Part shown: one piece after another, positions 21,583-45,069 of the stretch
Layout: each line of letters begins with the position of its first letter
Position numbering within the stretch: the first letter of the stretch is position 1
IMG/VR virus record: IMGVR_UViG_3300044957_000763
Location: 414,841-478,840 of that record
Length of the DNA stretch: 64,000 nucleotides
Direction: 5' to 3' (one strand)
Program-made: the position numbers and the translations under genes
The notes under the pieces: model-generated
Told to the model about the DNA's origin: nothing
Seen by the model: only the letters and a program-made list of their open reading frames with translations
The model's database searches: none

Positions 21583-22290
21583 ATGGCCGAAAATAAAGAT
21601 AAACAGGTCGTTAGTTCAATAGTGGTTCCCGGAATGCGAAAGGCATTTCGTGACTTGCCAGTAGAACAGCGTAAATATATTCAGGATTTGAAAGGGGACG
21701 AGCAGCCTTTTTATCCTTTGCCACCTGACCCATATGATGGTGTCACTTATGTTACTTTTCATGAGCCAAAATGTTCTATTTGCTCGTCCCCTTACAAAAC
21801 CCAACTTGAACATGTGTTTCTAGCCAATGGAGAAAGTCCTAGTGCGGTTTCTCAGTATTTCTGGTATTACTATGGCGTAATGGTCAACCCCGCTGCAATT
21901 AAGCAGCACATGAACAAACACTGCGTACTCAATGAAATAACAACATCGGGTTTGGCACAACTTCAGAAACGTGCCGAGGAGTTTGACTGGTGGCGATTGC
22001 GCAGAAGCGAACTGGTAATCACAGGGTTATTGTCGCAAATTGACCGTATTGAAGGTATACGCACAAAGGGCAACCCAGACCTTGAACTAAAGAAATCATC
22101 AGAAATGCGCGCGTTGCTTGCATCATACTCTACAGCACAAAAACAATTTGAAGAAGAAGCCAATGAGGTCATTAGCGTTCGTCATGTCTTGGCAGACATT
22201 ATGAACCTATTGACTGATGAATCTAGTAAAGAAATCATTCGCAAATACGTCAATGACCTCAGAACCAAAATTCGAGGGGATATGTCGTAA
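21583..22290 (+). CDS. Putative terminase small subunit
   Basis: CSIC...HTH-like...HMNKH N-terminal region plus a helical C-terminus; its stop overlaps the terL start. Confidence 0.55.
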   Translation: MAENKDKQVVSSIVVPGMRKAFRDLPVEQRKYIQDLKGDEQPFYPLPPDPYDGVTYVTFHEPKCSICSSPYKTQLEHVFLANGESPSAVSQYFWYYYGVMVNPAAIKQHMNKHCVLNEITTSGLAQLQKRAEEFDWWRLRRSELVITGLLSQIDRIEGIRTKGNPDLELKKSSEMRALLASYSTAQKQFEEEANEVISVRHVLADIMNLLTDESSKEIIRKYVNDLRTKIRGDMS

Positions 22291-25200
22291 TGGCAAAAGA
22301 TAAAAAACAAGACAATTTGCAACAAAAAGAAGACCTGTTGCGAGAATTGACAGAATTCAGCCAAGTTTTTAATACCGATGCTGAGATTGCAGAAGAAGAG
22401 ACATTATTTACGTTTACTTCTCAAGCACGCAGCGAGACACCAGCACCACCTGAGCCTCCGAAATCTCCCAAGAATCCATATGGATTGCATGATATTATCA
22501 CATTTTGTGAGCACCCATATTTTCTTGGTCAAACCCTCACACCAATGCAGAAAATAATCCTAAAGGCATGGTGTATGGGTTCTGAGGGCAACCAACATTT
22601 GACACTGACCAATGAAGTCACGTCAGATTGTTCTGGATGTGCATGGGATTACGTCCGAACCAAAGAAGAAGAACTGTCCAAGATTACGCTTGGAGATGGT
22701 GTTTACAAGTTGCCACCTGGCAGAGTGCCGTCTGAAAATGCGCCGTGTCTAAATTGTACTAGATTCTGCCCTGTTACAAGAGCAAAGCGATTTGAGCAAC
22801 TCAAATACGAAACCATTAATGATTTTGAATTGGAAGATGTTAAACAACGAGAAGAGGCAGAATTAGTTGACCGTTTTGAAACGGAAATGATGATGCTCGA
22901 AAGAGAAGGCATCCCGGTTAAAACCAAAGACCAAATTGTAAGAAAACTCGGTCGTGCTTTCACAGAAATGATTTTGGTAATGGGGCGTCGTAGCGGAAAG
23001 GCACTTGAACTCAATACGCCGGTGTTGACAACTAATGGATGGTCGACCATGGGCGAGTTAAAAGTCGGTGATTATGTATACGGAGAAGACGGTAGACCAA
23101 CTAAGGTTATTGCAGTCAGTCCAGTGTGGGAAAATAGGGAGTGCTTTGAAGTTGAGTTTACAACTGGCGAAGTTATTATTGCAGATGCTGCTCATGAATG
23201 GACTGTATCAGATAAAAATGCCAGAAAACACAAAGACAGATACCATGGAGTTGTTAAAACCAAAACATTAGAAACTAGAGAACTGGCTCAAAAAGTTAAA
23301 ATTGGCAAAGAATACAACTGGGCAATTGATGTGGCAAAGCCGTTAGAAAAAGAGTCTGTTGAATTACCAATTAATCCATATACTATGGGTGTTTGGCTAG
23401 GAGATGGTACTTCTCAAAACGGTTTTATCACATGCCACGAACATGAAATCATGCAACGAATTCTTGCCACTGGTGAATTTGAAAAAGTAGAACAGCATGC
23501 AAGTAATCCAAATCTATGGACATGCTTCGGTCTCAAAATAAAACTAAGAGGACTAGATGTGCTTGAGAACAAGCATATCCCAGATGTGTATTTTTGCGGG
23601 TCTTTAGAGCAAAGGTTAGAATTGCTTCGTGGGTTGGTTGATACAGATGGACATGTAGATGCGCAAGGACATGTAGAAATTGTCAGTGTGAACGAGCGGC
23701 TTGCTAGTGATATATATGCACTAGTGGCATCTGTTGGTGCAAAAGTAAAACTTTACAAAGACCGAGCAATGCTCAATGGAGTAGATTGTGGTCCTCGATA
23801 TCGCGTGTCTTTTTGTCCTCGTGGCGATATAAAAATCGCGCACCTTAAACGCAAACAAAGTAATTGTAAACCAACAGTGCACACATTGCATTCATCTCAC
23901 AGAATTCGAGATATTAGACCGTGCAACGAAAAACACAATACTGTATGTATTGAAGTGGATAATCAATCACACCTATTTCTTGTTGGTCGCTCAATGATAC
24001 CAACACACAACAGCTATCTTGTTGCAATTTTGGCACTATATGCCGTATATCGCTTGATTAAAATGGAGCATCCGCAAAAGGCATATGGTCTGATGGATTT
24101 CGATATTATTACGGTGTTGAATGTTGCTAAATCAGAAGACCAGGCAAAAGGTGCGGTTTTTGAGAAAATCTTTTCTCTGGTTCTTACGTCTCCGTTTTTT
24201 GGACCGTTCGTAGCACACTACACTCAAACCACGCTACACTTTATGACCCCAAGAGACTTGGAGGAGCACGAACGCAGAAAGCGACGTGGAATCACAGAGA
24301 AAAAAGGAACAATCAATCTGATATCCGGTCACTCCAATTCTAGCTCTCTTGTTGGTAAAACAGTTATCGTTCTCATTATTGACGAGATGGCCGAAATGGC
24401 CGGTAAAAAGGGTGACGACGGCAAAGATAAAGAGCTTTACGAAAAGCTGAAGAAATCACTTGCGACATTCGGCTCTGATGGTAAAACAATCTTGCTGTCT
24501 AACCCACTGTACGAAACGGGGGAATTTTATCGTCTGTATGAAACTTCGTTTTCTCGAGAACATGTATTGATGTTTCAGGTTCCAACTGAAATATGTAACC
24601 CAACTGTTGAAAAGTCTTATCTCGAACAAGAGCGCAAAGATAGTCCAGAATCATATTCTATGCATTTTGAGGCCCAATTCGCATCAAGTAGTAAAGACCC
24701 ATTTTTGCCACCCGATATTGTGTCCGCTGCATTTTTCAGACTTGAAAATCAAGGCCGAACAGAAATAGGAAAGCCTGGAGTCAGTTATTTTGTTCATCTT
24801 GACCCTGCATATAACTCAGATATGTACGCTCTAGCCTTAGTACATGCAGAACCAATGAAAGACAAGAAAGACAAAGATGGTCGACCATTGATGGAAGTCA
24901 TTGTCGACCATATTCATATTTGGAAGCCAAAAGACAAACACAACCCAGTCAATCCAGAAATAGTAAATCAATATGTAATTGATTTATCAAAGCGATTCAA
25001 CATAGTTCAGGTTACATATGACCACTGGAATAGCGAGTCGTCTATTTGGATTCTCAAAAGCCATGGTATCAATGCCGAGAAACGCGTGTTCTCGCCTGGA
25101 TATCAAGATATGATTTTCCAAAATATCAAAGACTTAATGATGGGAGAGCGCATACACTTTTATGGCATAGATACATGGGCACAGGATAAAAATGGAGTTG

Positions 25201-25409
25201 TGTGTGTGCGGGAAATCACTGAGGCAAAGAAGCAGTTCACATATTTAGAAAGAGTCATCAAACACAACAGACCTAAAATACAAGCACCATATGGCATCAA
25301 TGATGACGTAGTTGATGCAGTTGTGGCCGCGGCTTTTGAGTGTATCAACACTAAACAATACAAAACAACAGCAAGGCCTCGCGGTGTCAGAATGCCAAGG
25401 GCATTTTAA
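22290..25409 (+). CDS. terL: Terminase large subunit, intein-containing
   Basis: Walker A GRRSGK/S split by an intein; Walker B LIIDEMA; coupling motif LLSNP; RNase H-like nuclease VHLDPA...DDVVDAV. Confidence 0.93.
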   Translation: MAKDKKQDNLQQKEDLLRELTEFSQVFNTDAEIAEEETLFTFTSQARSETPAPPEPPKSPKNPYGLHDIITFCEHPYFLGQTLTPMQKIILKAWCMGSEGNQHLTLTNEVTSDCSGCAWDYVRTKEEELSKITLGDGVYKLPPGRVPSENAPCLNCTRFCPVTRAKRFEQLKYETINDFELEDVKQREEAELVDRFETEMMMLEREGIPVKTKDQIVRKLGRAFTEMILVMGRRSGKALELNTPVLTTNGWSTMGELKVGDYVYGEDGRPTKVIAVSPVWENRECFEVEFTTGEVIIADAAHEWTVSDKNARKHKDRYHGVVKTKTLETRELAQKVKIGKEYNWAIDVAKPLEKESVELPINPYTMGVWLGDGTSQNGFITCHEHEIMQRILATGEFEKVEQHASNPNLWTCFGLKIKLRGLDVLENKHIPDVYFCGSLEQRLELLRGLVDTDGHVDAQGHVEIVSVNERLASDIYALVASVGAKVKLYKDRAMLNGVDCGPRYRVSFCPRGDIKIAHLKRKQSNCKPTVHTLHSSHRIRDIRPCNEKHNTVCIEVDNQSHLFLVGRSMIPTHNSYLVAILALYAVYRLIKMEHPQKAYGLMDFDIITVLNVAKSEDQAKGAVFEKIFSLVLTSPFFGPFVAHYTQTTLHFMTPRDLEEHERRKRRGITEKKGTINLISGHSNSSSLVGKTVIVLIIDEMAEMAGKKGDDGKDKELYEKLKKSLATFGSDGKTILLSNPLYETGEFYRLYETSFSREHVLMFQVPTEICNPTVEKSYLEQERKDSPESYSMHFEAQFASSSKDPFLPPDIVSAAFFRLENQGRTEIGKPGVSYFVHLDPAYNSDMYALALVHAEPMKDKKDKDGRPLMEVIVDHIHIWKPKDKHNPVNPEIVNQYVIDLSKRFNIVQVTYDHWNSESSIWILKSHGINAEKRVFSPGYQDMIFQNIKDLMMGERIHFYGIDTWAQDKNGVVCVREITEAKKQFTYLERVIKHNRPKIQAPYGINDDVVDAVVAAAFECINTKQYKTTARPRGVRMPRAF
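23001..24011 (+). mobile_element. Class 3 intein (337 aa) with LAGLIDADG homing endonuclease
   Basis: Starts Ala (ALELNTPVLT), ends IPTHN before Ser+1; block B AAHEW (Trp), block F TVCIEV (Cys), block G THN (Thr); endonuclease blocks GVWLGDG and LRGLVDTDG. Confidence 0.92.
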
Positions 25410-26652: not shown

Positions 26653-26671
26653 CGTGTATAACCCGCTATAT
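26647..26671 (+). promoter_or_regulatory. TGTATAA in the loop of a hairpin overlapping the glf start codon
   Basis: atatagcg-tgtataacc-cgctatat; the 3' arm includes the AT of ATG 26670. Confidence 0.5.
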
Positions 26672-27800: not shown

Positions 27801-28349
27801 ATGACTGTGAACGCGGAAATCCTGTCACAAATTACCAGACTAGCCAGCGCATATGATGCGCATGGTCAATTAGAGACTGCAGACATTTTAGACGCAGTTC
27901 TAATACGCGTTGCACAGGCCACCGGACCATTCAACATGAATACACCGATGGAAGGTCGTATGCAAAAATATGACCGTTATCACGAAAAAGAGCTTGATGG
28001 TGTTGAACAAGACCGTCAAAAACACCCGAGATTAAGACCCACAGATTATGTCGATGATGGCACTACAGACGAAGACATCGGCAAAGACGAGGTAGTTCCG
28101 ACTGTTCCAAAGCGCAAGAAATTCAAAAAACCTGACAGTGAAACAATTTTTAGCATGGATGATACAGACCCAAAGAAGGGCGGAAACCCGTTCAGAATGC
28201 ACGACAAGGGCACTGCTGGTTGGGGATTCATCACATATGCACCGGATAGTGCGGGTATGTCTGGATTAGACAAATTTACTTGGGAAAACAAGCGTGGAAT
28301 TTATGACAATGCATCTGACAGATATAAACTCTTGTTGCCGCAGACTTAA
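27801..28349 (+). CDS. Hypothetical head-associated protein (N-terminal AxxLDxxG..AD motif)
   Basis: RLASAYDAHGQLETADILDAVL followed by IRVAQ; start may be the in-frame GTG at 27807. Confidence 0.55.
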   Translation: MTVNAEILSQITRLASAYDAHGQLETADILDAVLIRVAQATGPFNMNTPMEGRMQKYDRYHEKELDGVEQDRQKHPRLRPTDYVDDGTTDEDIGKDEVVPTVPKRKKFKKPDSETIFSMDDTDPKKGGNPFRMHDKGTAGWGFITYAPDSAGMSGLDKFTWENKRGIYDNASDRYKLLLPQT

Positions 28350-28371
28350 TGTGGAAACTTTCAAAAAATCG

Positions 28372-28400
28372 TAGGTGTTGTAAACACAAATTCCTAAAGG
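28372..28400 (+). promoter_or_regulatory. Putative phage promoter TAGGTG-N17-TAAAGG
   Basis: Intergenic, upstream of 28430; shares AATCGTAGGTGT with 25408-25419. Confidence 0.65.
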
Positions 28401-28429
28401 CATAGCAACACCTAGCGAGGTAAAACATT

Positions 28430-28951
28430 ATGCCCACACCAATTGGTCTAGTATCACAACAATCATCTTGGGATTACTTGACTCAAGGCCACGACAACTT
28501 TAGTCTTTCTGACATTCAAAAGAACCTGCTTGAAATGAGTGGTGTTCCCATTCGAGAAGCGTCTAAAACTGACCCAAGAATTGTTGTTGCGCTTGAGATG
28601 ATTCTCAAGAATGAATCACAGGATTTGACCGCTCTGGCAGAAGCGGTTGGTAAACCGCGACACGTATATAGCGTGCCGAGCGAAATTAGCGACTATGAAT
28701 TGATTAGCCTCAAGACTGCTGGATTAGTCCAGGGTCATGGTCGCGCAGTCAGTATTACTGACAAAGGCAAAGAAGCCATTCGTATTTATTGGCTTAACTC
28801 AAGCAATAAATACAAGGATTCTAAGTCCGCTGAGTTTGTACATCCATGGAGCAAGCAAGCGTCAAATACTGACGAAAACATTAGGACTGCATCTGTGCGC
28901 CGGCGAAAATTTGCCGATAGCAATTATCGCAAATTCCAAAACGAGGAATAA
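28430..28951 (+). CDS. Hypothetical protein with a winged-helix-like segment
   Basis: ELISLKTAGLVQGHGRAVSITDKGKEAI resembles a wHTH recognition helix plus wing; C-terminal IRTAS and RKFAD. Confidence 0.5.
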   Translation: MPTPIGLVSQQSSWDYLTQGHDNFSLSDIQKNLLEMSGVPIREASKTDPRIVVALEMILKNESQDLTALAEAVGKPRHVYSVPSEISDYELISLKTAGLVQGHGRAVSITDKGKEAIRIYWLNSSNKYKDSKSAEFVHPWSKQASNTDENIRTASVRRRKFADSNYRKFQNEE

Positions 28952-28952
28952 C

Positions 28953-29726
28953 ATGAAGTCTACACTCCATGCGCAAGCAAAAGAAATTGCTAAGGTAATG
29001 CATCGCATTGCTGCGTGGAGTAACGACTATCCAGAGCGCAAAAAGAAGAGTGCCAACCTTATCAAGCTGCCACCAGTGTTTCTTGGCGGAGACAGTGGTG
29101 AGCCGATTGATGGAAGAAAAAACCTTGAGGCTATGATAAAGGTTTTGGCAGATTATCAGGTTAGCGGTCTAACACTCAACGAATTGCCCCAACGATACGC
29201 GTCTTATGGTGGAACTGTTAAAGGCGAAGAAATAGGAACCAGACGAATTCATAACTGGATGCATCAAGTTGCATTCGGAATTCGCGCGGCGATGATTGAA
29301 ATGAACGATGACGAAGGCGACGAGGCCATACGGGTGGCATCAAACGTCGTTGAAGTTCTCGAGCAGTATCCGCTTGTATTTGTGGCAAGAGAGGGCAATG
29401 AATACCGGCCACTGAGATACGCTTCTAGAGATGCCAAAGAACGATGGTTATGCGAAGAAGTAGTACAACAAAGACTCGGTACAAACTACAACAGTTATGG
29501 CGCACAAATCACTGATGATGAATGGTGTCAAAACGGAGTTGGTATGCAGTACCGAGTGGCACACTCGTCACTCAAAAGTAGCATTGAAAAATTGGTGAAA
29601 CAGGCCCAAAAACTAGACCAACTTGGTCAGTATACAGAAGCTGACACCATAGATGAGGCTTTGTCTAAGATTCAACGAGGAAGCAACGTCTTAGATACAT
29701 TTAACAACACACAGGAAGCGAATTAA
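28953..29726 (+). CDS. Hypothetical protein (C-terminal AxxLDxxG..AD motif)
   Basis: ATG 28953 with GAGG at 28943 (the track start 28737 overlaps the previous gene); KLVKQAQKLDQLGQYTEADTIDEAL near the C-terminus. Confidence 0.6.
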   Translation: MKSTLHAQAKEIAKVMHRIAAWSNDYPERKKKSANLIKLPPVFLGGDSGEPIDGRKNLEAMIKVLADYQVSGLTLNELPQRYASYGGTVKGEEIGTRRIHNWMHQVAFGIRAAMIEMNDDEGDEAIRVASNVVEVLEQYPLVFVAREGNEYRPLRYASRDAKERWLCEEVVQQRLGTNYNSYGAQITDDEWCQNGVGMQYRVAHSSLKSSIEKLVKQAQKLDQLGQYTEADTIDEALSKIQRGSNVLDTFNNTQEAN

Positions 29727-29727
29727 C

Positions 29728-32700
29728 GTGAATATTAAGAATCTGCTTGGTAAGTTAAGCATTGGTCGTGCTGGGGTATCCACCAGCACAGGTAACATTG
29801 TGCGCACAGGTGCGCCAGAAGATGCATTTCGTTCTGGTGCTTATGAGTTTATTCGCAAAGCACAAACTGAATCCGTTGAACCCACAAAATCCAATATTGC
29901 CAAAAAGCGCATGACACATCCGGTTGTACTTGTGTCTCGATTCAAATACCCATATGTCAAAACCAAGAAAGTACCAGGCGCTGAAGAGGGCGACAAAGAT
30001 ACCAGAGTTGAAACTGGAGAAATTGGCTGGAAGACGACCGTAAACAAAGATGTTGCAGATGAAGCAGTTAATCAATTGTATGCATATGAATTGTATCTGT
30101 ATCATGACACACAAACTGGTCAAGACCTAATTATTGGACAACCAATTGAAGAATATCTTGCAAAATCACAAGCCAAGAGTCAGCAACCAGCGTTTGACTT
30201 AAATGCACCAAGTACTCCAATGGAAGAGCCTGAGTGGCGCACAGAACAAAAAGCAAAGGCAAAGGCAAAGGCAAAGCGTGCAAATAAAGCAGATATTGAT
30301 GCACTAATGCGAAGATTCTCTGCTGGAGAAGCTGCAGAAATGGATATTCCAACTGGAGATTTTTCACAAGATAGAGAAAATGAGCCAGAAAGATACCAAT
30401 TCAAAGGCAAGATTACAAGGTTTACTACACAGCCCAATGACCCAGAGGGTCAAGCTGCTAAACTGGGTGCCAAAGTCGTGCCAGCTTCTGAATTTGGTTA
30501 TCGCGCATATGAAGTAATGCCAAGTCCGGTCGCGGGCGATTTATACACAGAGCCAAACGGCGAAGATGAATCAAAAATACCAACTTGGACAAAGGGTATT
30601 CATATACCAACTGAAGAGTCTCCGTCCGCATATGGGACAAGTTTCAGATATCGGTTCTCTAATGGCGAACCGGTCCCAACACTTAACGGTGCGAAACACG
30701 TGTTGTCTGAGTTATTAAGTGTTAATGGAGAGAAGGCCGCGAAAGACCCAGGTATGAATGCAGATTTCAATATTTATGAATTCATGACTGCAAACAATCT
30801 TTGGGACCAAATGGATAATTCCGGCCGCTTGCCAGAAGGCACAAAAGCCCAAATTGATAATACCGAAGCACAAATTGAATCAATACCAGAGCTAGAACAC
30901 TTCACGCTTGGCGGCGGCTCGCTGGTAAATCTTGGTGGCAAGAAAGATTCTATTATGTCAGAAGAGAATCTTTTGGCAAGAGCACTGTGGCGATTGACGA
31001 ATCCATCTGTTTTCACTTACATCAACAATGATGGAACCGCTGCATTTAGCCCCAAGAACCCAGATGACAAAAACATTAGTCCATTGGTTGCGCTCGACAA
31101 GCAACTCCATGCTGCGCGTCAGGCGTATGTTGAACTGTTTGATTCACTTAGTCCGGCAGAAAGAAAGGTAAGTCCAGAGCTTATTGAGGCGGCAGACAAG
31201 GCCAACAAACTTGGTATCAAGTTTGTTGACACAATGGCAGCCAAATACCCGTCTAAGTTGCGCGAATTTGTACTTAAACAACCATTTGTGGGTCACGCGC
31301 CCGCTGGTCGATATGGCAAACCTGGTGAAAAAGTAGAGAGCGAATATGCGCTCAGCACTACATCACACTTATCAGACAATGGTCGAACTATTGCTACATA
31401 TGAATCAGGTGGCGGACTTCAAAAACTGAATGACGATGACAGAAAGCTGTATGCTCTTGTCAAGGCATTTGAGCGCAATGCAGACACTGCATTAAACAAT
31501 CAGGCAAGAACGCTCCATAGTCAACATCATGCCAAGTTGGAAGATTTTACATCTAAAGACGATAAATCATACAAAATTCCCACACCAAGGTCGGCTGACG
31601 GAGAGTGGTCTGAACCAGCCGGTAAGTCTATTGACTTTATTGAGCAACACTGGCTTGCAAATCACTTGTTAAGTACGGAAGACAAAAATGCAATTTCAGA
31701 ACTTCGGAAAAGCCTAGCTGCTACAGGTAAGAAATATACCTGGGGACAGGCAGCAATGGCGTATCTCAAAAATCAAGACAGATTAAAAGTAAAGAAATAC
31801 ACACAAGGTGCTGGTATGTTGGGTTCAACAGACCACTTCTTGTCGCAAGGACCTTTTACGTTTGAGATTCCTTCGTCCAATGAAGACGAAGGCGAAAATG
31901 AGCTCATAACACTAAACAGGTTTACACCACAGTCTGAAACCGCAGAAAAACTCAAGCATGAAGTGCTCAAACAGCATTTGTTTAATAAACAAGAAGTAGA
32001 ACTTGCAGAGTATTTGGCCGGTAGAGTGCCGTTTGAAAATGAAGACGATGCGCTATTTTCAATTTGGGCCAACTGGTTAATAAAGGCCAAACGCACTGAG
32101 TCAGCCAATAGGGCTGAAAAAGCTCTTGCCGCTCAAGAAGCCAAAGAAAAGTCTAAATCAGAAAATGCCAGGGGTAAACCAAGTGGCTGGCCTTATGCTT
32201 TGACATCTCAAAAATTTAGCGATGAAGAGCGCGAACAATTTGCTGGCAATCTAGAAGATTTTGTCAATACGATTAAAAACCAAGCCGGTGCGGTAATAGA
32301 CCACCATCGAAAAATGGTCTATATCAACCCAGATGGTTCTCAAGTTGAGTTGCCAAGTGCCTTGCCAGTGCAACTACCGGAAGGCGCAAGAGTTCCAATG
32401 CCAGTAAGTATGCTGAAGAGAATCAAGGACGATGATGTATTGGCACAATATGGTTTTGTGAGAATTAAAAACGCTCTATACAGTGCTGTAAACAGCCAGC
32501 CTGTAACAATGCAAGATGGCGTATTGGCTATTGGCGATGAATTGGTTCCTGTTGAATCACTGAACAATATGACGCCTAGCGACATTGTCAAAAACTACAA
32601 TATTTTCATGCGAGATGGTAAGTACTATCACGTATCTGAAAAAAATAGGGTGAGCAGTCCTGTTGTAGAGGTTATTGCACGCGGTGGTGAAAAAATTTCA

Positions 32701-35700
32701 TTGCCATCTGAGAACCTGGGTGAAAGCGGGTTGCAATTGCTTGTTAAATACGTCGAACAAACAACTCGTCAAAAGCTCGCCGGAGGACAAGTGCACGCAT
32801 TCGAATCTGATGATGACAAAATCAAGATGAATGATGTATATACTGCGATGCTTGAGAATGGAGCGTCCCCAAAAAATGCGTATCTGGAATCTAAAAAGGC
32901 TGTAATGCACGAAAAACTCAATAGTGTTGCGGTGCAGTGCTTGTCTAACGGCAAGGATGCAAGTCCACAACATATGAAAGCTGCGGAGGTTTGGATACCA
33001 AAAATAATTGAGACACTTCTCAAGGATGGTAACAAACAGTCAGTCGAAATTATCGCAGATAACTACGATGGATTGGATAATTTGATGAATGCTGCTCGGG
33101 CTGGCCGCCTAGATGTTGATGATGCTCAATATCTAGTAAATACCTACAATAATTTAACCGGAACAACCCCGCAACAAGGCGCATACATCAAACCAATAAT
33201 GCAAGCTGTTTTACTGCATGGATATCAAAAAGAATCTGTTCCTGGTTTGCCGAACAACAAATTCTGGCACATGCTAATGTCCAACGCAGGTAAGAGATTT
33301 GTAGACCGCGCGATTGATACTGAATCTGGAAATGACTTAAGTGCCCAGGCAATGTTACACTTAATGGAAAAACCGGAGTCTCCACTTGAGGGTTATGATT
33401 TGGGCAGAATTTTGCCCAAATCCACAGTATCATTGCTTGAAAAAACACTTAAGGCCGATGAGCGAAGAATGCAACGCGCAAATGGTCGATACAAGACAGG
33501 GAAAAGAACCGTTGTCGAAGAATGGCAGGCTATGCCTTTGCCAAAACTGTTGGCTAATCATATGGATTGGATTACTAATCCACAGATTTTTGGTCAAGAA
33601 ATGATTGACAATGCACACGAACTTGCTGATACAGAACTGGTTAATCAAGAACGCAAAAGACTATTCCCAGCATCATTAGAACATTTGTCTCCTGCTGATG
33701 CCAAACGATTGGAGAATATACAAAGAAATGCCACTGCAATGTATATTCTATTACAACGCCAGGCTTCTAAGCTAGAAAAGTATCCTCAACAAGACGTATG
33801 GGATATTATCATGAGCGAACCCGGCCTTGATACAAGTTCACCTGAGTGGCATGCAAAACACAAGCTAGCTCAACATGAAGCTCGTATAGAAAAAACTTCT
33901 GACTCTTTGCAAGAACAAGCCAAATTAAGAGAGCAACTATCAATCAGAAGCATGTTCGATGTTCCTGAAAATGAGCCAGTTATTAAACTTAGTAACAAAG
34001 ATGCCGAGTCTATTATTGACCAACCCATGGTTAATGCCCTGGCGTCTTCGTTAATGCATGCGCAAGATAGAGACAGGGTTAGTATTTGGGGCAGAGTTAA
34101 TCGTGCCTTTGTAGAAGAGGCAAAAAGCCAAAAGAGCAATCATGCCAAAGGGGTTGTTTATCCTAAGCATTCCGTAGCACTCACAGACACTTCGCCAATC
34201 ATGATAACAGACGACGATGGCAAAGAGCGAGATGTAACTGGATATACGCCTGAAGAGTACGAAAACATTAATAACACAGATACCAAATCGCTTTACAGTG
34301 ATGACAAGGTGTTGCCTGCTGAAATATTGGCTCGAATTAACAAAAACACACGTAGCATATTGTCTGGCAGTAGTGATGGCAATTCAAAAACTCTATTGGG
34401 CGAATTCAGACAGAAGCTAAACGAAGACCTTATGGGAGAAAACCAGGGTCAGATTACTCGTGCACAACGAGCAGAAGCCATGTACACAAAAATCTACACT
34501 ATGGTGTCCAGGCTGAGACGAAGTGTGTTAGAAGACAAAGAAACTCTGGCACACATGGATGCACGTGGTGCCAAGAAGGCATTGCTCAATAAATTGAAAT
34601 CAAATATTGAGAACGACACCAATATCTTGGCAATGGTCGAATCATATAACGTGTTTGAACACCTGGCCAAGATGATTCATTTTGGTAAGGAATTTGGCAA
34701 GAACATTGACAGGCTTACAAAATTAGACTTAGAAGAAAAATCCATTGTAGACAGACTAAAAGACATATACCCAAGTGCGCAACAATCTCCGATGGCTTCT
34801 GCAAAAATGTATGAGCCGGAAATTGCAGATAGACTTATAGAGATAGGCAAAATAAGAACTGGACTTTGCTATATGGCACAAAATAATGCAATGTCTTATG
34901 ATGAAAGTGCTAAAGAATTGTGGAACTTTGTTACTAGAACCACATACATGGACAAACGCAATATTGTGAAAGGAGAAGCCAATGATTTTGGCGTTAATAT
35001 CAGTAACGAAATCGCCAAAAATGAATCCAGGCTTTCTCAAGATGACCGAGACGAGGTTGCTAACATGGTGTTTGACAAACTTGATAAACATGCAAGATGG
35101 TTCGAAGCACCTAGTAACGAAGTGCCGGCATACGAAAGCAGTGCTATAAGGGTTAGAAACCTGAAAAACATTGAGCCACTTACCAGCGAAGACAAAGAAA
35201 TAACCAGTGATATTGATGCTGATGAATTAGCAAGATTCTTGGGTAGGCGCGGTGTGTTGTTTGCTTTAGAAATGGGCAAATTGGACGCAATTTCTGGCAG
35301 ACAAAAGACAGCCAATGTTGATTTTGGGGACGATAGCAAAGCCAGGGTTAAATACACCCAGGACTTCACGCAACCAAAAGACATGTCTTGGTTTATTCAC
35401 AACTGGCTGGAGAATGCATCGGTTTCAGATGAAGCCACTGTGCCGGGAAGAAACGGGTTAAGTGCACTTGACACTGCAATGTGCGAACTCGAAAGGAAGT
35501 TCGCCAAGCCAGGTGGTATTTATTGGACTACTAATGGAGCAGAAAACCCGCTTATTCAATACGCAAATCCGCATGCAATGGGTTACAGTTTGTTCGCAAA
35601 GTATGTTGATATGACGTCTCGTGTAACCCCTGCACCTTTAGAACAATTAATGACAGATGCGTGTAATAAGATTTCACAAGATGTTGACAGCATTCGAGCA

Positions 35701-37236
35701 AGCATTAATTACGACCAGTTGCCAGATAATTCAAAACAAAAGGTTGATGAAGCAATTTTGATTGCATCTAACGCTTACAAAAACCAAGGAATGAAATCTG
35801 CATTAATAGCAGACTACACTAAAAAGAACAATCCAACAAAGTTTGTAGGAACAGACCCACAAGTCTTTACAGATGCTAAAAATGCAGTATCTATACAAAT
35901 GGCTAATCATTATGTGATTGATGACTTAGTGCGACGGGCCTCTGAAAATCAATTGTTTGTTAACAATGGCTCCGAATGGAGGTTCTCAGAAAAGGAAACG
36001 ATAGCTTATATTGCGCACACCGTTGCATCAGAAGTTGTTTCATCAATCAAACATCTTGAGACTCCTGGCCATTGGGAATTAGCGCCGCTATCACCAGTTC
36101 AACTGTACACAGGTATTAAGCCTGGTGAAGTACTTAATACAGATGAAATTCAAGGATATATGTCGCATAGACTACTTGAATTCAAAAAAATGTTGACAGA
36201 GCAATGGAAAGTGGAAACGGTTAGTGACTTAAGCGGAACAAGTTCACATATGATAAAAATTGACCGCATTATCAATACGGCTCAAGATATACTTGATGGC
36301 TTATTGCACTCGAGCATGGGCGGAGATGGTAATGATATTGAATTACCAATGGCACAAGCCATGCAGTCGCTACATGCCAAGTCACAAACCGTTAACACTG
36401 CGTTTCAAGAAGACCTTGATGAAAAAATCAATGACCCAAGAACAAACCTAACGCAGTTCCATGATACACATGTGTTGCCGGCATTGCTTAATTCCGGGCA
36501 AGGAAATATTGAACTTGCGGCGGCAAGGGCTATGCGTCAATTGTCATCTGGTGAATCGACATGGCCAATTGTGTCAATTGGAGTCAAGTCTAAGGTCAGA
36601 CAGCGCAAGGCTGACGAGACACAAGAAGATTATGATGCGTTTCTCAATGCAGAGGCTAAGAAGGCTAAGAAAAGCGTTTCATCCTTGACTTCATACGGTC
36701 CAAAGGACATCAAGCGTATAAATTCTGATGCACTTCGAGACAATGTTATGTCTCAGAGAGTTCATGCCGTGCTTTCAAAGCAAATCTTTGATAGACTAGG
36801 GAGCTTGAAAAATGGTGGCGATTACAATTCTGCCGTTAAGAACAGTGACAGGGCGCACTTCGATAAATTGAAATCCAAAGGATATTATGGTCATTTGGAC
36901 GAGGCACCCACTGGCACTGCTGACTTCGTTCATGGAAATATTGGTGTGCTAAACCTTGATGTTTTGCATCCATTATATGAGCGACTGACTGTCGGACATC
37001 AAGTGGGAATTAGAGGTCTTACACAAGAGCAAAAAAATCAAAGAAAGCCGATAACCGAAAATGCGCCAGAGCCTTTGGCACAACCTGAAACTGTTGTAGA
37101 CGCGCAGACCCCCAGCACGCAGGCGGCAGTTATTGATAAACTAGTGCGCTATGCGACCAGGTTAGACGCAAGAGGCAGATTTGCAGAGGCCGATTTGGTT
37201 GATTCATTAATCCATAAGCTAGAGGTGGGTGTGTGA
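29728..37236 (+). CDS. Giant 2502-aa helical protein, putative internal head/ejection protein
   Basis: 7.5 kb uninterrupted ORF in the head cluster; charged and helix-rich; N-terminal IRKAQ, C-terminal RYATRLDARGRFAEADLVDSL. Confidence 0.6.
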   Translation: MNIKNLLGKLSIGRAGVSTSTGNIVRTGAPEDAFRSGAYEFIRKAQTESVEPTKSNIAKKRMTHPVVLVSRFKYPYVKTKKVPGAEEGDKDTRVETGEIGWKTTVNKDVADEAVNQLYAYELYLYHDTQTGQDLIIGQPIEEYLAKSQAKSQQPAFDLNAPSTPMEEPEWRTEQKAKAKAKAKRANKADIDALMRRFSAGEAAEMDIPTGDFSQDRENEPERYQFKGKITRFTTQPNDPEGQAAKLGAKVVPASEFGYRAYEVMPSPVAGDLYTEPNGEDESKIPTWTKGIHIPTEESPSAYGTSFRYRFSNGEPVPTLNGAKHVLSELLSVNGEKAAKDPGMNADFNIYEFMTANNLWDQMDNSGRLPEGTKAQIDNTEAQIESIPELEHFTLGGGSLVNLGGKKDSIMSEENLLARALWRLTNPSVFTYINNDGTAAFSPKNPDDKNISPLVALDKQLHAARQAYVELFDSLSPAERKVSPELIEAADKANKLGIKFVDTMAAKYPSKLREFVLKQPFVGHAPAGRYGKPGEKVESEYALSTTSHLSDNGRTIATYESGGGLQKLNDDDRKLYALVKAFERNADTALNNQARTLHSQHHAKLEDFTSKDDKSYKIPTPRSADGEWSEPAGKSIDFIEQHWLANHLLSTEDKNAISELRKSLAATGKKYTWGQAAMAYLKNQDRLKVKKYTQGAGMLGSTDHFLSQGPFTFEIPSSNEDEGENELITLNRFTPQSETAEKLKHEVLKQHLFNKQEVELAEYLAGRVPFENEDDALFSIWANWLIKAKRTESANRAEKALAAQEAKEKSKSENARGKPSGWPYALTSQKFSDEEREQFAGNLEDFVNTIKNQAGAVIDHHRKMVYINPDGSQVELPSALPVQLPEGARVPMPVSMLKRIKDDDVLAQYGFVRIKNALYSAVNSQPVTMQDGVLAIGDELVPVESLNNMTPSDIVKNYNIFMRDGKYYHVSEKNRVSSPVVEVIARGGEKISLPSENLGESGLQLLVKYVEQTTRQKLAGGQVHAFESDDDKIKMNDVYTAMLENGASPKNAYLESKKAVMHEKLNSVAVQCLSNGKDASPQHMKAAEVWIPKIIETLLKDGNKQSVEIIADNYDGLDNLMNAARAGRLDVDDAQYLVNTYNNLTGTTPQQGAYIKPIMQAVLLHGYQKESVPGLPNNKFWHMLMSNAGKRFVDRAIDTESGNDLSAQAMLHLMEKPESPLEGYDLGRILPKSTVSLLEKTLKADERRMQRANGRYKTGKRTVVEEWQAMPLPKLLANHMDWITNPQIFGQEMIDNAHELADTELVNQERKRLFPASLEHLSPADAKRLENIQRNATAMYILLQRQASKLEKYPQQDVWDIIMSEPGLDTSSPEWHAKHKLAQHEARIEKTSDSLQEQAKLREQLSIRSMFDVPENEPVIKLSNKDAESIIDQPMVNALASSLMHAQDRDRVSIWGRVNRAFVEEAKSQKSNHAKGVVYPKHSVALTDTSPIMITDDDGKERDVTGYTPEEYENINNTDTKSLYSDDKVLPAEILARINKNTRSILSGSSDGNSKTLLGEFRQKLNEDLMGENQGQITRAQRAEAMYTKIYTMVSRLRRSVLEDKETLAHMDARGAKKALLNKLKSNIENDTNILAMVESYNVFEHLAKMIHFGKEFGKNIDRLTKLDLEEKSIVDRLKDIYPSAQQSPMASAKMYEPEIADRLIEIGKIRTGLCYMAQNNAMSYDESAKELWNFVTRTTYMDKRNIVKGEANDFGVNISNEIAKNESRLSQDDRDEVANMVFDKLDKHARWFEAPSNEVPAYESSAIRVRNLKNIEPLTSEDKEITSDIDADELARFLGRRGVLFALEMGKLDAISGRQKTANVDFGDDSKARVKYTQDFTQPKDMSWFIHNWLENASVSDEATVPGRNGLSALDTAMCELERKFAKPGGIYWTTNGAENPLIQYANPHAMGYSLFAKYVDMTSRVTPAPLEQLMTDACNKISQDVDSIRASINYDQLPDNSKQKVDEAILIASNAYKNQGMKSALIADYTKKNNPTKFVGTDPQVFTDAKNAVSIQMANHYVIDDLVRRASENQLFVNNGSEWRFSEKETIAYIAHTVASEVVSSIKHLETPGHWELAPLSPVQLYTGIKPGEVLNTDEIQGYMSHRLLEFKKMLTEQWKVETVSDLSGTSSHMIKIDRIINTAQDILDGLLHSSMGGDGNDIELPMAQAMQSLHAKSQTVNTAFQEDLDEKINDPRTNLTQFHDTHVLPALLNSGQGNIELAAARAMRQLSSGESTWPIVSIGVKSKVRQRKADETQEDYDAFLNAEAKKAKKSVSSLTSYGPKDIKRINSDALRDNVMSQRVHAVLSKQIFDRLGSLKNGGDYNSAVKNSDRAHFDKLKSKGYYGHLDEAPTGTADFVHGNIGVLNLDVLHPLYERLTVGHQVGIRGLTQEQKNQRKPITENAPEPLAQPETVVDAQTPSTQAAVIDKLVRYATRLDARGRFAEADLVDSLIHKLEVGV

Positions 37237-42539: not shown

Positions 42540-44939
42540 ATGAGGAAAGACGGACAAAATGCACCGCGCCTACAGAGTGTTATTACTGAAGCTGTAGAAA
42601 GAGTCAGCAACATACAACCGAGAAACACCGTTGGTGCTCGAGAACACCCTACTATTCGCAGTGCTCGCTCATCATCAGATGTAAAGAGAGACATTCGTGC
42701 GAGATATGCATTTGTTAGTGGTAGCCAAAACACCATTACAACAGCGCCTAATTTTTACACTCCGTTCACGACACCAAGTTCTTTTCAGATTCCCACAAAC
42801 AGAATTGAAGAGTATTTGTGGGCGCAATGGTTTTTTGATAATGAACCTGCCGTTGCGGCATCTATTGAGTTTTACACAGACTTTCCGCTTTCTGGTTTCG
42901 AACTAGAATGTGGGAACTCTAAGGTTCTTGAGTTTTATCAGCAAATGGTCAAAGATTTGGATTTTGCCAGATTGCTTCCGTTGATTAGTCAAGAATACCA
43001 TCTTCGCGGCGATGTATTTGTTTATGCCTCTCTTGATTGCGAGCATTGCGGAGGAACAGGCGTCGACCAAGACACTCATGAGCCTTGCGAACACCTAGGT
43101 GCTAAATGGAAAAGCATCACGCTGCTAAACCCCACACAGGTAGAACTTAGTCCATCAATGATGGACATGCAACCAATTTACTATTACATGCCAGACGAAG
43201 GCATGAAAAAGGTTGTTCAAGAAAGAAAGCCAATTGCAACATACAAGTCAATTCCAGATGCAATTAAGGCTTATATCATGAAAAATGAGCCAATTCCGCT
43301 AGACCCAGTGTGTATCCACCACTTTAAGAGAGGTGCGGCGCCTTGGCAACCATTCGGCCGAAGTATGGTACGAAGGCTTTTTCCCACGCTTGTATACAAG
43401 GATAAGTTACGACAAGCACAGTATTTGGTTGCAGAAAGGCATATTTTACCATTCAAGATTGCCAAGTTAGGCAATGACGACCGACCAGCCAGCGAACAAG
43501 ACCTTCAAATGATTGCGGAAGAAATCGCTAATGTCGCAAACGACCCTTTGATGACAATGATTGCACCGCATACATTTGAAATTGATTATGTTGGCGCAAG
43601 TGGAAAAGTACTACAACTCACAAACGAATTCGAACTTATCAACCAAGATATTTTCGATGGATTCATGCTTAACAAAGCATTGCTCAACGGAGAAGGTCCT
43701 TCCTATGCCAATGCACAAGTTGGTCTGCTTAGTATGGGCCAGCGCCTCAATAAATTGCGCGGAGAAATCGCGCACTGGATTGAAGAAAATCTATTCAAAC
43801 CAGTTGCTGAATGGAATGGATTTGAGGTTGATAATAAGCGTGGTGGAACTAAGTTGGTTTACCCAACAGTGAAATGGGATGATTTGCAATTGCGTGATAA
43901 CACCAATCTGCTGCAAATTGCCATGCAAGCGCGACAAGCCGGAGACCTTTCCTCACAGACAATGCTCGGACTCATGGATATCAACTACGACCAAGAAATT
44001 GAAAGACTACGTATGGAAAACAGCTATGCCGTATCTACGTCTCCAATGTTGCCTGCTGGCGAAATGGGCAATGGATATCGTGGACCAATGGGTGGCGGAA
44101 TGCCGCCGATGGGTGGCGGAATGCCACCAATGGGTGGCGGAATGCCACCAATGGGTGGTGGAATGCCGCCAATGGACGGAGGAATGGGCATGCCGCCAGC
44201 ACCTGGCGGCATGCCACCGATGCCAATGGCTTCAAATAATACCCCAGAAGAAAACTATCGAGAAGCCGTGTCGTTTACCAACGCAGTACATGACAGTGTG
44301 CGCACAAGTTTCTACAATCACACACGTCAGGTTTATGCCAGCAAGTACAAATCTGAAGCACATCGGAACTTTGTTGAATCACAGTGTCCAATTGATGGAA
44401 CTGGATTCCGGGGTGTATTGGCCTCAGAAATGAGTCCATTGATTGACCCGCTAGATGATTATGGACAATATCATGGCGGAGATGAGTCTGTTCCTATGAA
44501 CCCGCTTGCAATGCAAGAACGGCAAAGTGATGTGTCAAACGGTTGGGTTCGCGAAGCAAGAAAGCCATCAAAAGATGAGGACATCAGACCAAGTCCATAT
44601 CAGAAGTTTACAAGTTGGGAAAACAAACTGTACGGAATTGTTCTGAGCATTAACCCTCCATTGCCATTCTATGCACAATACGCGGCAGGGCCTGATGACC
44701 AGTACAGGCTCGATGGTGCGTTCCCTGATATTCAACTGGGTGTTGAGGCAGATAGTGAAACCTATCATTCAACTCCAGAATATATTGAAAGAGACCGTTA
44801 CCGGGATTCACAACTAGCGGCCCAAGGATGGACTTTGTTGCGATTTACAGAAAATGAACTTAAAGAAAGACCGGACGAGGTCCAGACGTTGATTATGCGT
44901 ACAATCCAACATCTAATCAAACGCAAACTCGGGAACTAA
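42540..44939 (+). CDS. Portal protein with a Pro/Met/Gly linker and C-terminal DUF559-like nuclease-fold domain
   Basis: WFFDNEPAVAASIEFYTDFP, PFGRSMVRRLF, AERHILP.KIAKLG, WIEENLFKPVAE, VKWDDLQL portal-type pattern directly before the protease; C-terminal YRLDGAF...VEADSETYH...RDSQLAAQGWTLLRFTE. Confidence 0.75.
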   Translation: MRKDGQNAPRLQSVITEAVERVSNIQPRNTVGAREHPTIRSARSSSDVKRDIRARYAFVSGSQNTITTAPNFYTPFTTPSSFQIPTNRIEEYLWAQWFFDNEPAVAASIEFYTDFPLSGFELECGNSKVLEFYQQMVKDLDFARLLPLISQEYHLRGDVFVYASLDCEHCGGTGVDQDTHEPCEHLGAKWKSITLLNPTQVELSPSMMDMQPIYYYMPDEGMKKVVQERKPIATYKSIPDAIKAYIMKNEPIPLDPVCIHHFKRGAAPWQPFGRSMVRRLFPTLVYKDKLRQAQYLVAERHILPFKIAKLGNDDRPASEQDLQMIAEEIANVANDPLMTMIAPHTFEIDYVGASGKVLQLTNEFELINQDIFDGFMLNKALLNGEGPSYANAQVGLLSMGQRLNKLRGEIAHWIEENLFKPVAEWNGFEVDNKRGGTKLVYPTVKWDDLQLRDNTNLLQIAMQARQAGDLSSQTMLGLMDINYDQEIERLRMENSYAVSTSPMLPAGEMGNGYRGPMGGGMPPMGGGMPPMGGGMPPMGGGMPPMDGGMGMPPAPGGMPPMPMASNNTPEENYREAVSFTNAVHDSVRTSFYNHTRQVYASKYKSEAHRNFVESQCPIDGTGFRGVLASEMSPLIDPLDDYGQYHGGDESVPMNPLAMQERQSDVSNGWVREARKPSKDEDIRPSPYQKFTSWENKLYGIVLSINPPLPFYAQYAAGPDDQYRLDGAFPDIQLGVEADSETYHSTPEYIERDRYRDSQLAAQGWTLLRFTENELKERPDEVQTLIMRTIQHLIKRKLGN
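44085..44186 (+). repeat. 21-bp coding tandem repeat (PMGGGMP)n in the portal gene
   Basis: About 4.5 near-identical units of ccaatgggtggcggaatgccN. Confidence 0.9.
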
Positions 44940-44972: not shown

Positions 44973-45069
44973 TTCCAGACGATTTTTTGAAAACAAGTAG
45001 GTCTAAGGGCAAACATTGCCGAACGCACATATAGACGTTAACTTTTCAAAAAGTTGTTTTGGAGCGAGC

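What the first reader, a model, noticed from the sequence alone, without database searches (positions are those of the whole stretch)
27819..37220. The same helix-hairpin module A-x-x-L-D-x-x-G-x4-A-D-x-x-D at termini of three unrelated neighbouring proteins
Seen: ITRLASAYDAHGQLETADILDAVL (N-terminus of 27801), KLVKQAQKLDQLGQYTEADTIDEAL (C-terminus of 28953, ~29590-29665) and KLVRYATRLDARGRFAEADLVDSLI (C-terminus of the 2502-aa protein, ~37138-37212). The host proteins are otherwise dissimilar in size and sequence. In 27801 the module is followed at once by the RVAQ motif, as expected for a removable targeting tag. Inference: a portable oligomerisation or head-targeting module. I know no functional characterisation of it.
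Basis: partly seen in the sequence, partly recalled or inferred. Interest (0 to 1): 0.75.

Follow-up and report, generated by a model that had tools for sequence, protein, structure and literature searches.

The report
Portable docking tag of megaphage proteins
A conserved 32-residue helix-turn-helix tag, absent from every domain library searched, sits at the very end of eight unrelated proteins of this 479-kb phage and of about a hundred metagenomic protein clusters; it most likely docks them onto a shared partner, probably to load them into the phage head.

Summary
The window is the end of a 478,840-bp IMG/VR phage genome whose capsid protein is 49% identical to that of Bacillus phage G.

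**What is shown**
- The module (consensus h-x-x-L-h-[KR]-L-A-x-x-L-D-x-x-G-x-[HYF]-x-E-A-D-x-h-D-x-h-h) occurs in the three window proteins named.
- It also occurs in five more proteins elsewhere in the genome. All eight copies lie at an extreme N- or C-terminus.
- The pattern is found 8 times against 0.01 expected by chance.
- A profile search of 1.84 billion proteins finds 151 hits. Of these, 95 carry a full-length module, mostly terminal, on unrelated bodies.
- Pfam, PHROGs and PDB sequences hold no such family.
- AlphaFold2 models it as a helix-turn-helix hairpin.
- Orthologues keep the module at the same terminus.
- Module genes lie inside or beside head-assembly gene clusters in several lineages.

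**What is inferred**
- It is a cargo tag for the prohead.
- The R-h-A-Q motif is a protease site.

**Evidence against or missing**
- Phage G and more distant relatives lack the module.
- A capsid-protein co-fold gave no verdict.
- No proteomics exists.

Homotypic oligomerisation remains a live rival.

Verdict: a new sequence family, probably a new variant of the known kind "capsid or compartment targeting tag".

The parts
27801..28349 (+). Gene P0001 (182 aa), carrier of an N-terminal module. The rest is charged and probably disordered, followed by a conserved C-terminal domain.
   Evidence: orthologues and alignment A7; no Pfam or PHROG hit
27816..27911 (+). Module copy 1 (P0001 residues 6-37), the most divergent copy.
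   Evidence: HMM E 2.6e-7 per genome; alignment A1; canonical in the L114 orthologue
27906..27917 (+). RVAQ (residues 36-39), at the junction of module and body. Candidate processing site, or the end of helix 2.
   Evidence: conserved as R-[VIL]-A-Q-[AS]-T-G-P in the five orthologues that cover it; R-h-A-Q occurs 22 times against 8.3 expected in ORFs of 100 aa or more; [KR]-h-A at a fixed +7 spacing from the last Asp
28953..29726 (+). Gene P0010 (257 aa), a conserved head-cluster protein of unknown fold with a C-terminal module.
   Evidence: no significant Foldseek match
29577..29672 (+). Module copy 2 (P0010 residues 209-240).
   Evidence: E 4.4e-13; D, G, A and D invariant in 11 orthologues down to 36% identity; modelled as a helix-turn-helix
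29728..37236 (+). Gene P0004 (2502 aa), a giant protein with no recognisable domain and a C-terminal module on a Pro/Gln-rich linker.
   Evidence: 2390-aa orthologue in L114 at 43% identity, with the module retained
37126..37221 (+). Module copy 3 (P0004 residues 2467-2498).
   Evidence: E 9e-13. It is the only region shared with P0156, a large C-terminally tagged protein of another lineage encoded between portal and protease.
22290..25409 (+). Context: terminase large subunit interrupted by a LAGLIDADG intein or endonuclease.
   Evidence: the 702-aa version in L114 lacks the insert
42540..44939 (+). Context: portal protein.
   Evidence: phrog_16240, E 2e-37
45016..49302 (+). Context: prohead protease domain (about residues 60-260) fused to a long scaffold-like region with C-terminal zinc ribbons. 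A conserved R-V-A-Q-T lies at about residue 318.
49474..51384 (+). Context: acidic 636-aa protein (P0027), detected only in the module-bearing subclade among the genomes compared. Untested candidate scaffold or partner.
52175..53035 (+). Context: major capsid protein, 49% identical to Bacillus phage G gp27.

Best explanation
The module is a self-contained helix-turn-helix hairpin of about 32 residues. It is tethered by a flexible linker to the extreme N- or C-terminus of many otherwise unrelated proteins in a clade of uncultured megaphages related to phage G.

It works as a portable docking tag. Its buried residues (L6, L9, A10, L13, G17, A22, h25, h29) hold the two helices together. An invariant acidic face (D14, D23, D26, usually E21) binds one common partner.

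The most likely partner is a component of the assembling prohead, such as the scaffold or core, or the portal-proximal interior. Tagged proteins would then be built into the head as internal or ejected proteins. These include a 2502-aa giant, a possible ADP-ribosyltransferase and, in relatives, a ferritin-like protein.

In N-terminally tagged proteins the tag may afterwards be cut off by the prohead protease at the R/K-h-A-Q junction.

Shown:
- the module exists;
- it is terminal and portable;
- it is conserved under selection;
- it is hairpin-shaped in the models;
- it is associated with head-gene clusters.

Inferred:
- the partner;
- encapsidation;
- cleavage.
For: **Reality and portability**
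- Eight terminal copies in this genome.
- Carrier bodies are unrelated.
- 151 hits among 1.84 billion representatives, 95 with a full-length module. Of 107 modules, 51 start within the first 5 residues or so and 18 end within 23 residues of the C-terminus.
- Linkers next to the module are Pro/Gln/charge-rich.

**Selection**
- Orthologues of all three window carriers keep the module at the same terminus.
- Between P0004 and P0156 only the tag is alignable.

**Fold**
- Hairpin in the P0010 model.
- Two hairpins in the 67-aa two-module protein P0049.

**Head association**
- Three carriers sit between terminase and portal here, and likewise in L114.
- A 600-1100-aa protein with a C-terminal module lies between portal and prohead protease in L008, L078, L074 and L059.
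- 7-9 module genes lie within about 20 kb beside the terminase region in L009 and L090.

**Cargo types**
- The few recognisable bodies include ART-PolyVal and PcfJ. PMC7824862 describes ART domains in polyvalent proteins that phages inject with their DNA.
- A ferritin-like body also occurs, echoing encapsulin cargo.

**Junction motif**
- R-h-A-Q follows 3 of 5 N-terminal modules here and several in G002.
- It is conserved directly after the protease domain of P0026 orthologues.
- The Ala lies exactly 7 residues after D26 in 21 of 27 cases.
Against: - No proteomic or experimental evidence places any carrier in a virion.
- Phage G, the only cultured relative, carries no module. Neither do LR745208, Tunturi_5 or three complete relatives with 57-60% capsid-protein identity. 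The highly conserved capsid protein itself is therefore unlikely to be the receptor.
- Five of the 8 copies in G000, and most in G002, lie outside the head cluster.
- About a third of modules in the wider set are internal or duplicated. Some proteins consist of modules only (P0049), which fits a cargo tag poorly.
- One R-h-A-Q-bearing N-terminus belongs to a gene lying among replication genes (w4983-5984). The motif overlaps the natural end of helix 2, so it need not be a cleavage site.
- The ART-PolyVal match is below Pfam's threshold.
Confidence: 0.45

Rival explanations
1. Homotypic or heterotypic oligomerisation hairpin. Modules bind one another, two hairpins forming a four-helix unit, and knit the tagged proteins into one multiprotein assembly. 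That assembly could be an inner body or a cytoplasmic factory. No separate receptor is involved. This could coexist with encapsidation.
For: - The hairpin resembles a single TPR-like repeat. The profile cross-hits TPR arrays over positions 9-22.
- At least 12 representatives carry two modules, and P0049 is nothing but two modules. AlphaFold2 models P0049 as a compact four-helix protein from its single sequence (pLDDT 84, pTM 0.65). Its weak Foldseek neighbours are designed helical bundles and consensus TPRs.
Against: - No oligomer prediction or experiment was run.
- Invariant exposed acidic residues on every copy would repel each other in a purely homotypic interface unless a cation or a basic partner bridges them.
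- All Foldseek matches are non-significant (E > 0.5).
Confidence: 0.25
2. Common host-target or chaperone-binding tag. The hairpin directs diverse phage effectors to one host hub, or to a phage chaperone or protease acting as an adaptor or degron. Candidate hubs include RNA polymerase, a chaperone or ClpXP.
For: - Terminal position at either end is typical of degrons and adaptor-binding tags.
- Carriers are dispersed through the genome.
- Possible effector-like bodies occur, such as the weak ART match.
Against: - Module genes concentrate in head-assembly cassettes in several lineages.
- The module is conserved across phages from varied metagenomic sources, where hosts are likely to differ.
- No host partner can be named.
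Confidence: 0.12
3. No shared function: a chance or convergent amphipathic, TPR-like helical fragment.
For: Short helical motifs recur by chance. Fifty-five of the 150 listed profile hits are unrelated TPR proteins.
Against: - 8 copies observed against 0.01 expected.
- Strict terminal placement.
- Invariant G and A, and nearly invariant A10, D14 and D26, across 89 diverse copies (column frequencies).
- Retention in orthologues whose bodies diverge to 36-43% identity.
Confidence: 0.03

Closest known systems
T4 capsid targeting sequence (CTS) of the internal proteins IPI-III and Alt
   Same: A short terminal tag shared by unrelated proteins directs them into the prohead, and the prohead protease then removes it. 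The proposed logic here is the same, including a candidate junction site.
   Different: The CTS is about 10 residues, N-terminal only, and ends in the L/I-x-E site. This module is a 32-residue hairpin with a different sequence, sits at either terminus, and has a candidate R-h-A-Q site. Neither encapsidation nor cleavage is shown here.
P22 scaffolding protein C-terminal coat-binding helix-loop-helix (my recollection of the literature)
   Same: A terminal helix-turn-helix of about 30-40 residues docks onto the procapsid interior through an electrostatic interface.
   Different: The P22 hairpin is basic and belongs to one protein, the scaffold. This one is acidic and is spread over many proteins. 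A profile search of PDB sequences found no related chain.
Encapsulin cargo-loading peptides and bacterial-microcompartment encapsulation peptides
   Same: Portable tags at the N- or C-terminus, joined by flexible linkers, load varied cargo into an HK97-fold or protein shell. A ferritin-like cargo occurs here in a relative, as in encapsulins.
   Different: Those tags are about 10-18 residues, a single strand or helix, with unrelated consensus sequences. There is no sequence relationship.
Tetratricopeptide repeat (TPR)
   Same: Helix-turn-helix with small residues (A, G, A) at the packing positions and an aromatic after the turn. The profile cross-hits TPR arrays over positions 9-22.
   Different: The module is solitary and terminal, not in arrays. 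Its conserved D14, D23 and D26 are not part of the TPR consensus. No Pfam TPR model matches, even at E up to 10.

Membership tests
TPR repeat (Pfam TPR clan) | Matches a TPR profile | tested here: not met
   hmmscan of 10 module-bearing pieces at E up to 10 gave no TPR family, only sub-threshold MIT and YscG hits. No family was shared among the 92 carriers.
TPR repeat (Pfam TPR clan) | Occurs as tandem arrays of three or more repeats forming a superhelix | tested here: not met
   One copy per protein in all 8 genome carriers. At most 2, usually far apart, in the representatives.
T4-type capsid targeting sequence | N-terminal peptide of about 10 residues ending in the L/I-x-E prohead protease site | tested here: not met
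   The module is 32 residues, sits at the N- or C-terminus, and has no L/I-x-E consensus at the junction.
T4-type capsid targeting sequence | Directs fused proteins into proheads and is removed on maturation | not testable with these tools
   This needs virion proteomics or encapsidation assays. Only circumstantial gene-context evidence is available.
Encapsulin cargo-loading peptide | Short C-terminal motif of the G-S-L or L-T-V-G-S-L type that binds the shell's inner surface | tested here: not met
   The consensus is L-A-x-x-L-D-x-x-G-x-h-x-E-A-D-x-h-D and has no such motif. The motif definition comes from my own knowledge.
P22-like scaffold coat-binding helix-loop-helix | Sequence relationship to a solved coat-binding domain | tested here: not met
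   The module profile against all PDB chain sequences gave a best E of 1.3, and only over 10 residues.
P22-like scaffold coat-binding helix-loop-helix | Binds the major capsid protein | tested here: inconclusive
   The co-fold of the capsid protein with P0010 residues 200-250 returned no verdict. This is evidence neither for nor against binding.
ART-PolyVal (PF18760), for the body of P0005 | Score above Pfam's gathering threshold | tested here: not met
   18.9 bits against a cut-off of 31.2, E 0.0026, residues 40-77. One carrier among the 92 representatives hits at E 4.6e-4. This is a lead only.
Any curated domain family (Pfam-A, PHROGs v4) | A model that covers the module | tested here: not met
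   None. Where a carrier has a Pfam domain (DUF6582, DUF5661, Ferritin), the domain lies outside the module.

The most novel reading that the evidence does not exclude
The hairpin is a universal cargo-loading "zip code" of a megaphage clade. Any protein carrying it at either end is built into the giant capsid through one receptor in the scaffold or core. N-terminal tags are clipped off at R-h-A-Q by the prohead protease, and the cargo is delivered into the host with the DNA. This would be a natural, programmable protein-packaging system. Its interchangeable arsenal would include a 2500-aa giant, an ADP-ribosyltransferase-like enzyme and ferritin-like proteins.
Probability: 0.35. Interest if true: 0.8.

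Novelty: new variant of a known kind. Interest (0 to 1): 0.62.

Why it matters
Megaphages of about 0.5 Mb are almost entirely uncultured, and how they fill their very large heads with proteins is unknown.

A short, sharply conserved, transferable tag would give three things:
- a sequence handle for predicting the packaged or injected proteome of such phages from metagenomes alone;
- a directly testable hypothesis (tag-GFP encapsidation, receptor pull-down, protease mapping);
- possibly a tool for loading proteins into large capsids.

Even if the function turns out to be oligomerisation, this is an unannotated domain family seen in about a hundred protein clusters. It deserves a profile in the domain databases.

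Tried and rejected
- **Co-fold of the capsid protein (alignment A6) with P0010 residues 200-250.** Score 0.00, no verdict, so it is evidence neither way.
- **Foldseek of the P0010 model against PDB and BFVD, and of the P0049 model against PDB.** Nothing at E <= 0.001.
- **Module profile against PDB sequences.** Nothing.
- **Pfam and PHROGs on carriers and on isolated modules.** No family.
- **ESM Atlas look-alikes of the module.** Uninformative.
- **Megablast of the region against GenBank phages.** No match.
- **tblastn of two modules against GenBank phages.** No real hit, although the low-complexity filter may hide some.
- **Module profile against whole records of phage G, LR745208, Tunturi_5 and G003-G005.** No match. 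The tool's first-look filter could miss divergent copies.
- **The search for related loci with the module alignment.** With the portal alone it returned one partial locus.
- **P0004 homologues in G002, G003, G006 and phage G.** None by the genome search, but a 43%-identical orthologue exists in L114.
- **Idea that the putative scaffold P0027 ends in a degenerate module.** Not detected by the HMM, and P0027 is unrelated to the 600-aa C-terminally tagged protein of L078. Dropped.
- **Idea of a shared late-promoter motif.** GTAGGTG is not enriched genome-wide. TCGTAGGTG occurs 5 times against 1.6 expected on the + strand, 4 of them in the window. These are too few to use.
- **Orientation test of the [KR]-h-A junction motif (N 19/56, C 0/21).** Confounded, because most C-terminal modules end within a few residues.
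- **Literature.** Searches found no description of the module.
Full report
**Setting.** The window is bases 414,841-478,840 of a 478,840-bp IMG/VR virus record with direct terminal repeats.
- Its first 20 kb encode replication proteins: DNA polymerase, a UvsX-like recombinase, RecJ, ribonucleotide reductase, clamp loader and clamp.
- From w22290 a head-assembly block follows. It holds the terminase large subunit with a LAGLIDADG insert, UDP-galactopyranose mutase and the three genes of the finding. Then come DUF192, several unknowns, and the portal (w42540-44939).
- Next is a 1428-aa protein whose N-terminal part is a prohead protease (w45016-49302), then an acidic 636-aa protein, a 277-aa ORF (w51317-52150) and the major capsid protein (w52175-53035).
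- The capsid protein is 49% identical to gp27 of Bacillus phage G.
- At least 148 IMG/VR stretches encode relatives of it, and the 80 kept lie on contigs up to 548 kb. This is an uncultured megaphage of the phage G lineage.

**The observation.**
- A six-frame scan of the whole genome with a regular expression and then an HMM found five more copies. Four are N-terminal: P0005 (482 aa), P0006 (200 aa), P0007 (148 aa) and P0009 (490 aa). One is C-terminal: P0008 (217 aa).
- Every copy starts within 6 residues of the start codon or ends within 17 residues of the stop.
- The pattern occurs 8 times against 0.01 expected in shuffled ORFs.
- Apart from the module the eight proteins share nothing detectable, with two weak exceptions listed under the observation check.
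- Consensus from 89 diverse copies:
  - G17 and A22 are invariant.
  - D14 97%, D26 94%, A10 92%, L13 88%, D23 86%, L6 82%, L9 78%.
  - Position 19 is H, Y or F in 84% of copies, and E21 is present in 53%.
  - Positions 25, 28 and 29 are aliphatic.
- AlphaFold2 models the P0010 copy as helix, three-residue turn, helix.
- The 67-aa protein P0049, which is simply two modules, is modelled as four helices with pTM 0.65 from its single sequence.

**Spread.**
- A profile of the eight copies, searched against 1.84 billion cluster representatives, gave 151 hits at E <= 0.001.
- Of the 150 listed, 55 are NB-ARC/TPR-type repeat proteins that match only profile positions 9-22 many times over. These are analogues, not members.
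- The other 95 carry one or two full-length modules.
- Of 107 modules, 51 begin at about residues 1-5 and 18 end within 23 residues of the C-terminus.
- Of the 38 internal ones, 22 have a Met just upstream, against 28% expected. Many "internal" copies may therefore be mis-called starts.
- The bodies are unrelated. The few Pfam hits are single cases: Ferritin, ART-PolyVal, PcfJ, zinc ribbons and EF-hand in the family scan, and DUF6582 and DUF5661 on carriers in L007. Where a carrier has a Pfam domain, it lies outside the module.
- No Pfam, PHROG or PDB entry covers the module, and paper searches found no description.
- Within the capsid-defined clade the module is not universal.
  - Present: 8 copies in G000; 10 in G002 by the genome search and about 12 by my own scan (78% capsid identity); 3 in G006 (70%).
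  - Absent: three complete genomes at 57-60% identity, phage G, LR745208 and Tunturi_5.

**Selection on the module.**
- Orthologues of P0010 down to 36% identity keep D, G, A and D.
- A syntenic locus in an NCBI assembly (L114) keeps all three window modules at the same termini. Its 2390-aa orthologue of the giant protein is 43% identical overall. In its P0001 orthologue the annotated start had cut the module off.
- P0004 and P0156, a large tagged protein of another lineage, align only over the linker and module.

**Head association.**
- Here, and in L114, three carriers lie between terminase and portal.
- In L008, L078, L074 and L059 a 600-1100-aa protein with a C-terminal module, or a variant of it (…AEEVH…), lies immediately upstream of the prohead protease fusion. 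In L008 and L078 the portal was identified just before it. The 1493-aa gene upstream in L008 is the portal with an inserted endonuclease, not a terminase.
- In L009 nine genes within 19 kb each carry a module, one of them ferritin-like. In L090, from a 481-kb contig, at least seven module copies flank the terminase.
- Against this, five of eight carriers in G000 and most in G002 are dispersed.

**The R-h-A-Q motif.**
- R-[LIVMF]-A-Q occurs 22 times against 8.3 expected in ORFs of 100 aa or more.
- It directly follows three of the five N-terminal modules and lies at the extreme N-terminus of several other proteins (for example MRRFAQT).
- It sits about 60 residues after the protease domain of P0026, where [RK]-h-A-Q-x-A-G-T is conserved among close relatives.
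- In P0001 it is conserved in the orthologues that cover that region.
- Across the wider family a [KR]-h-A triplet lies at a fixed spacing, with the Ala 7 residues after D26, in 21 of 27 cases.
- This fits a processing site at the tag-cargo junction. It could equally be the end of helix 2. One such N-terminus belongs to a gene among replication genes. It remains a hypothesis.

**Mechanism.**
- The architecture is a terminal hairpin on a flexible linker, present on many unrelated proteins, with an invariant exposed acidic face. That is the architecture of targeting or docking tags: the T4 CTS, encapsulin and microcompartment peptides, and the P22 scaffold hairpin.
- Gene context points to the prohead as the destination.
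- Several phages that share the capsid protein lack the module, so the receptor is more likely a lineage-specific scaffold or core protein than the capsid protein. P0027 and P0028 were detected only in the module-bearing G002 and G006 among the genomes compared. This was not tested further.
- The single complex prediction allowed (capsid protein plus tag) gave no verdict.
- Homotypic pairing of hairpins is the main rival. Two-module and module-only proteins favour it. It is compatible with co-assembly into an inner body.

**Verdict.** The module is a new, unannotated sequence family. In function it is most likely a new variant of the known class of capsid or compartment targeting tags.

Noticed in passing
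window 22290-25409 (+): The terminase large subunit (1039 aa) is interrupted by a LAGLIDADG homing-endonuclease or intein-like insert at about residues 430-510. The orthologue in L114 is 702 aa without it. In L008 the portal gene carries an analogous insert (1493 aa, with DUF559 and LAGLIDADG hits).
   Followed up: partly
window 26670-27797 (+): A UDP-galactopyranose mutase gene (GLF, E 1.6e-68) sits inside the head-assembly block, between the terminase and the first module gene. It is conserved in that position in G002 and L114.
   Followed up: partly
window 45016-49302 (+), about residue 318; genome-wide: An R/K-h-A-Q motif is over-represented (22 against 8.3 expected). It lies at several extreme N-termini (MRRFAQT, MKRIAQT) and is conserved just after the prohead protease domain. 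It is a candidate protease recognition site.
   Followed up: partly
window 52175-53035 (+), residues 26-39: The capsid-protein N-arm carries EGR[VT]ALAQAM, conserved as far as Bacillus phage G (the following residues vary slightly in phage G). It contains the same L-A-Q core as helix 1 of the module and as the R-h-A-Q motif. The meaning is unknown.
   Followed up: no
window 48900-49300 (+), C-terminus of the 1428-aa protease fusion: Two CxxC…CxxC zinc-ribbon-like motifs, separated by Gly/Ala/Met/Pro-rich low-complexity sequence, end the protease-scaffold fusion protein.
   Followed up: no
window 21445, 25412, 28371, 49374 (+): TCGTAGGTG occurs 5 times on the + strand of the genome (1.6 expected), 4 of them in the head block. 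At least three of these (25412, 28371, 49374) lie just upstream of gene starts. It may be a promoter element.
   Followed up: partly
genome 253,305-254,079 (outside the window; G000:C1): Four copies of a repeat of about 70 bp or more (…TTTTGGACAACC…CCTTGTAGGTGG…TTTGCTCAAAATCGCCATGCTTCTTGC) are spaced about 190-390 bp apart.
   Followed up: no
L002:5815-7263 (P0005) and L005:6401-7873 (P0009): Two N-terminally tagged proteins also share a short C-terminal motif (LET[AT]YP..EN…[KR].[LM]Y, pairwise E 0.003-0.009). It is repeated once inside P0009, which itself looks internally duplicated.
   Followed up: no
L114 (NCBI GCA_018268375.1, contig JAFDWS010000002.1, 1.36 Mb): A locus syntenic with the window lies on a 1.36-Mb contig of a MAG labelled Armatimonadetes, and IMG/VR flags the related G006 as a provirus. 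These could be integrated megaphages, a host clue or a binning artefact. In that record the start of the P0001 orthologue is annotated too far downstream, which cuts off the module.
   Followed up: partly
L009:1626-6596 and L090:14169-19211: Related module-rich phages encode a 1650-1680-aa protein with a type IB topoisomerase domain a few kb downstream of the terminase, within the module-rich region.
   Followed up: no
L004:7733-12850 (genome about 93.7-98.8 kb): A 1705-aa protein with many PD40/WD40 beta-propeller repeats lies two genes from the C-terminally tagged, proline-rich P0008. Type II topoisomerase subunit genes flank P0008 on the other side.
   Followed up: no
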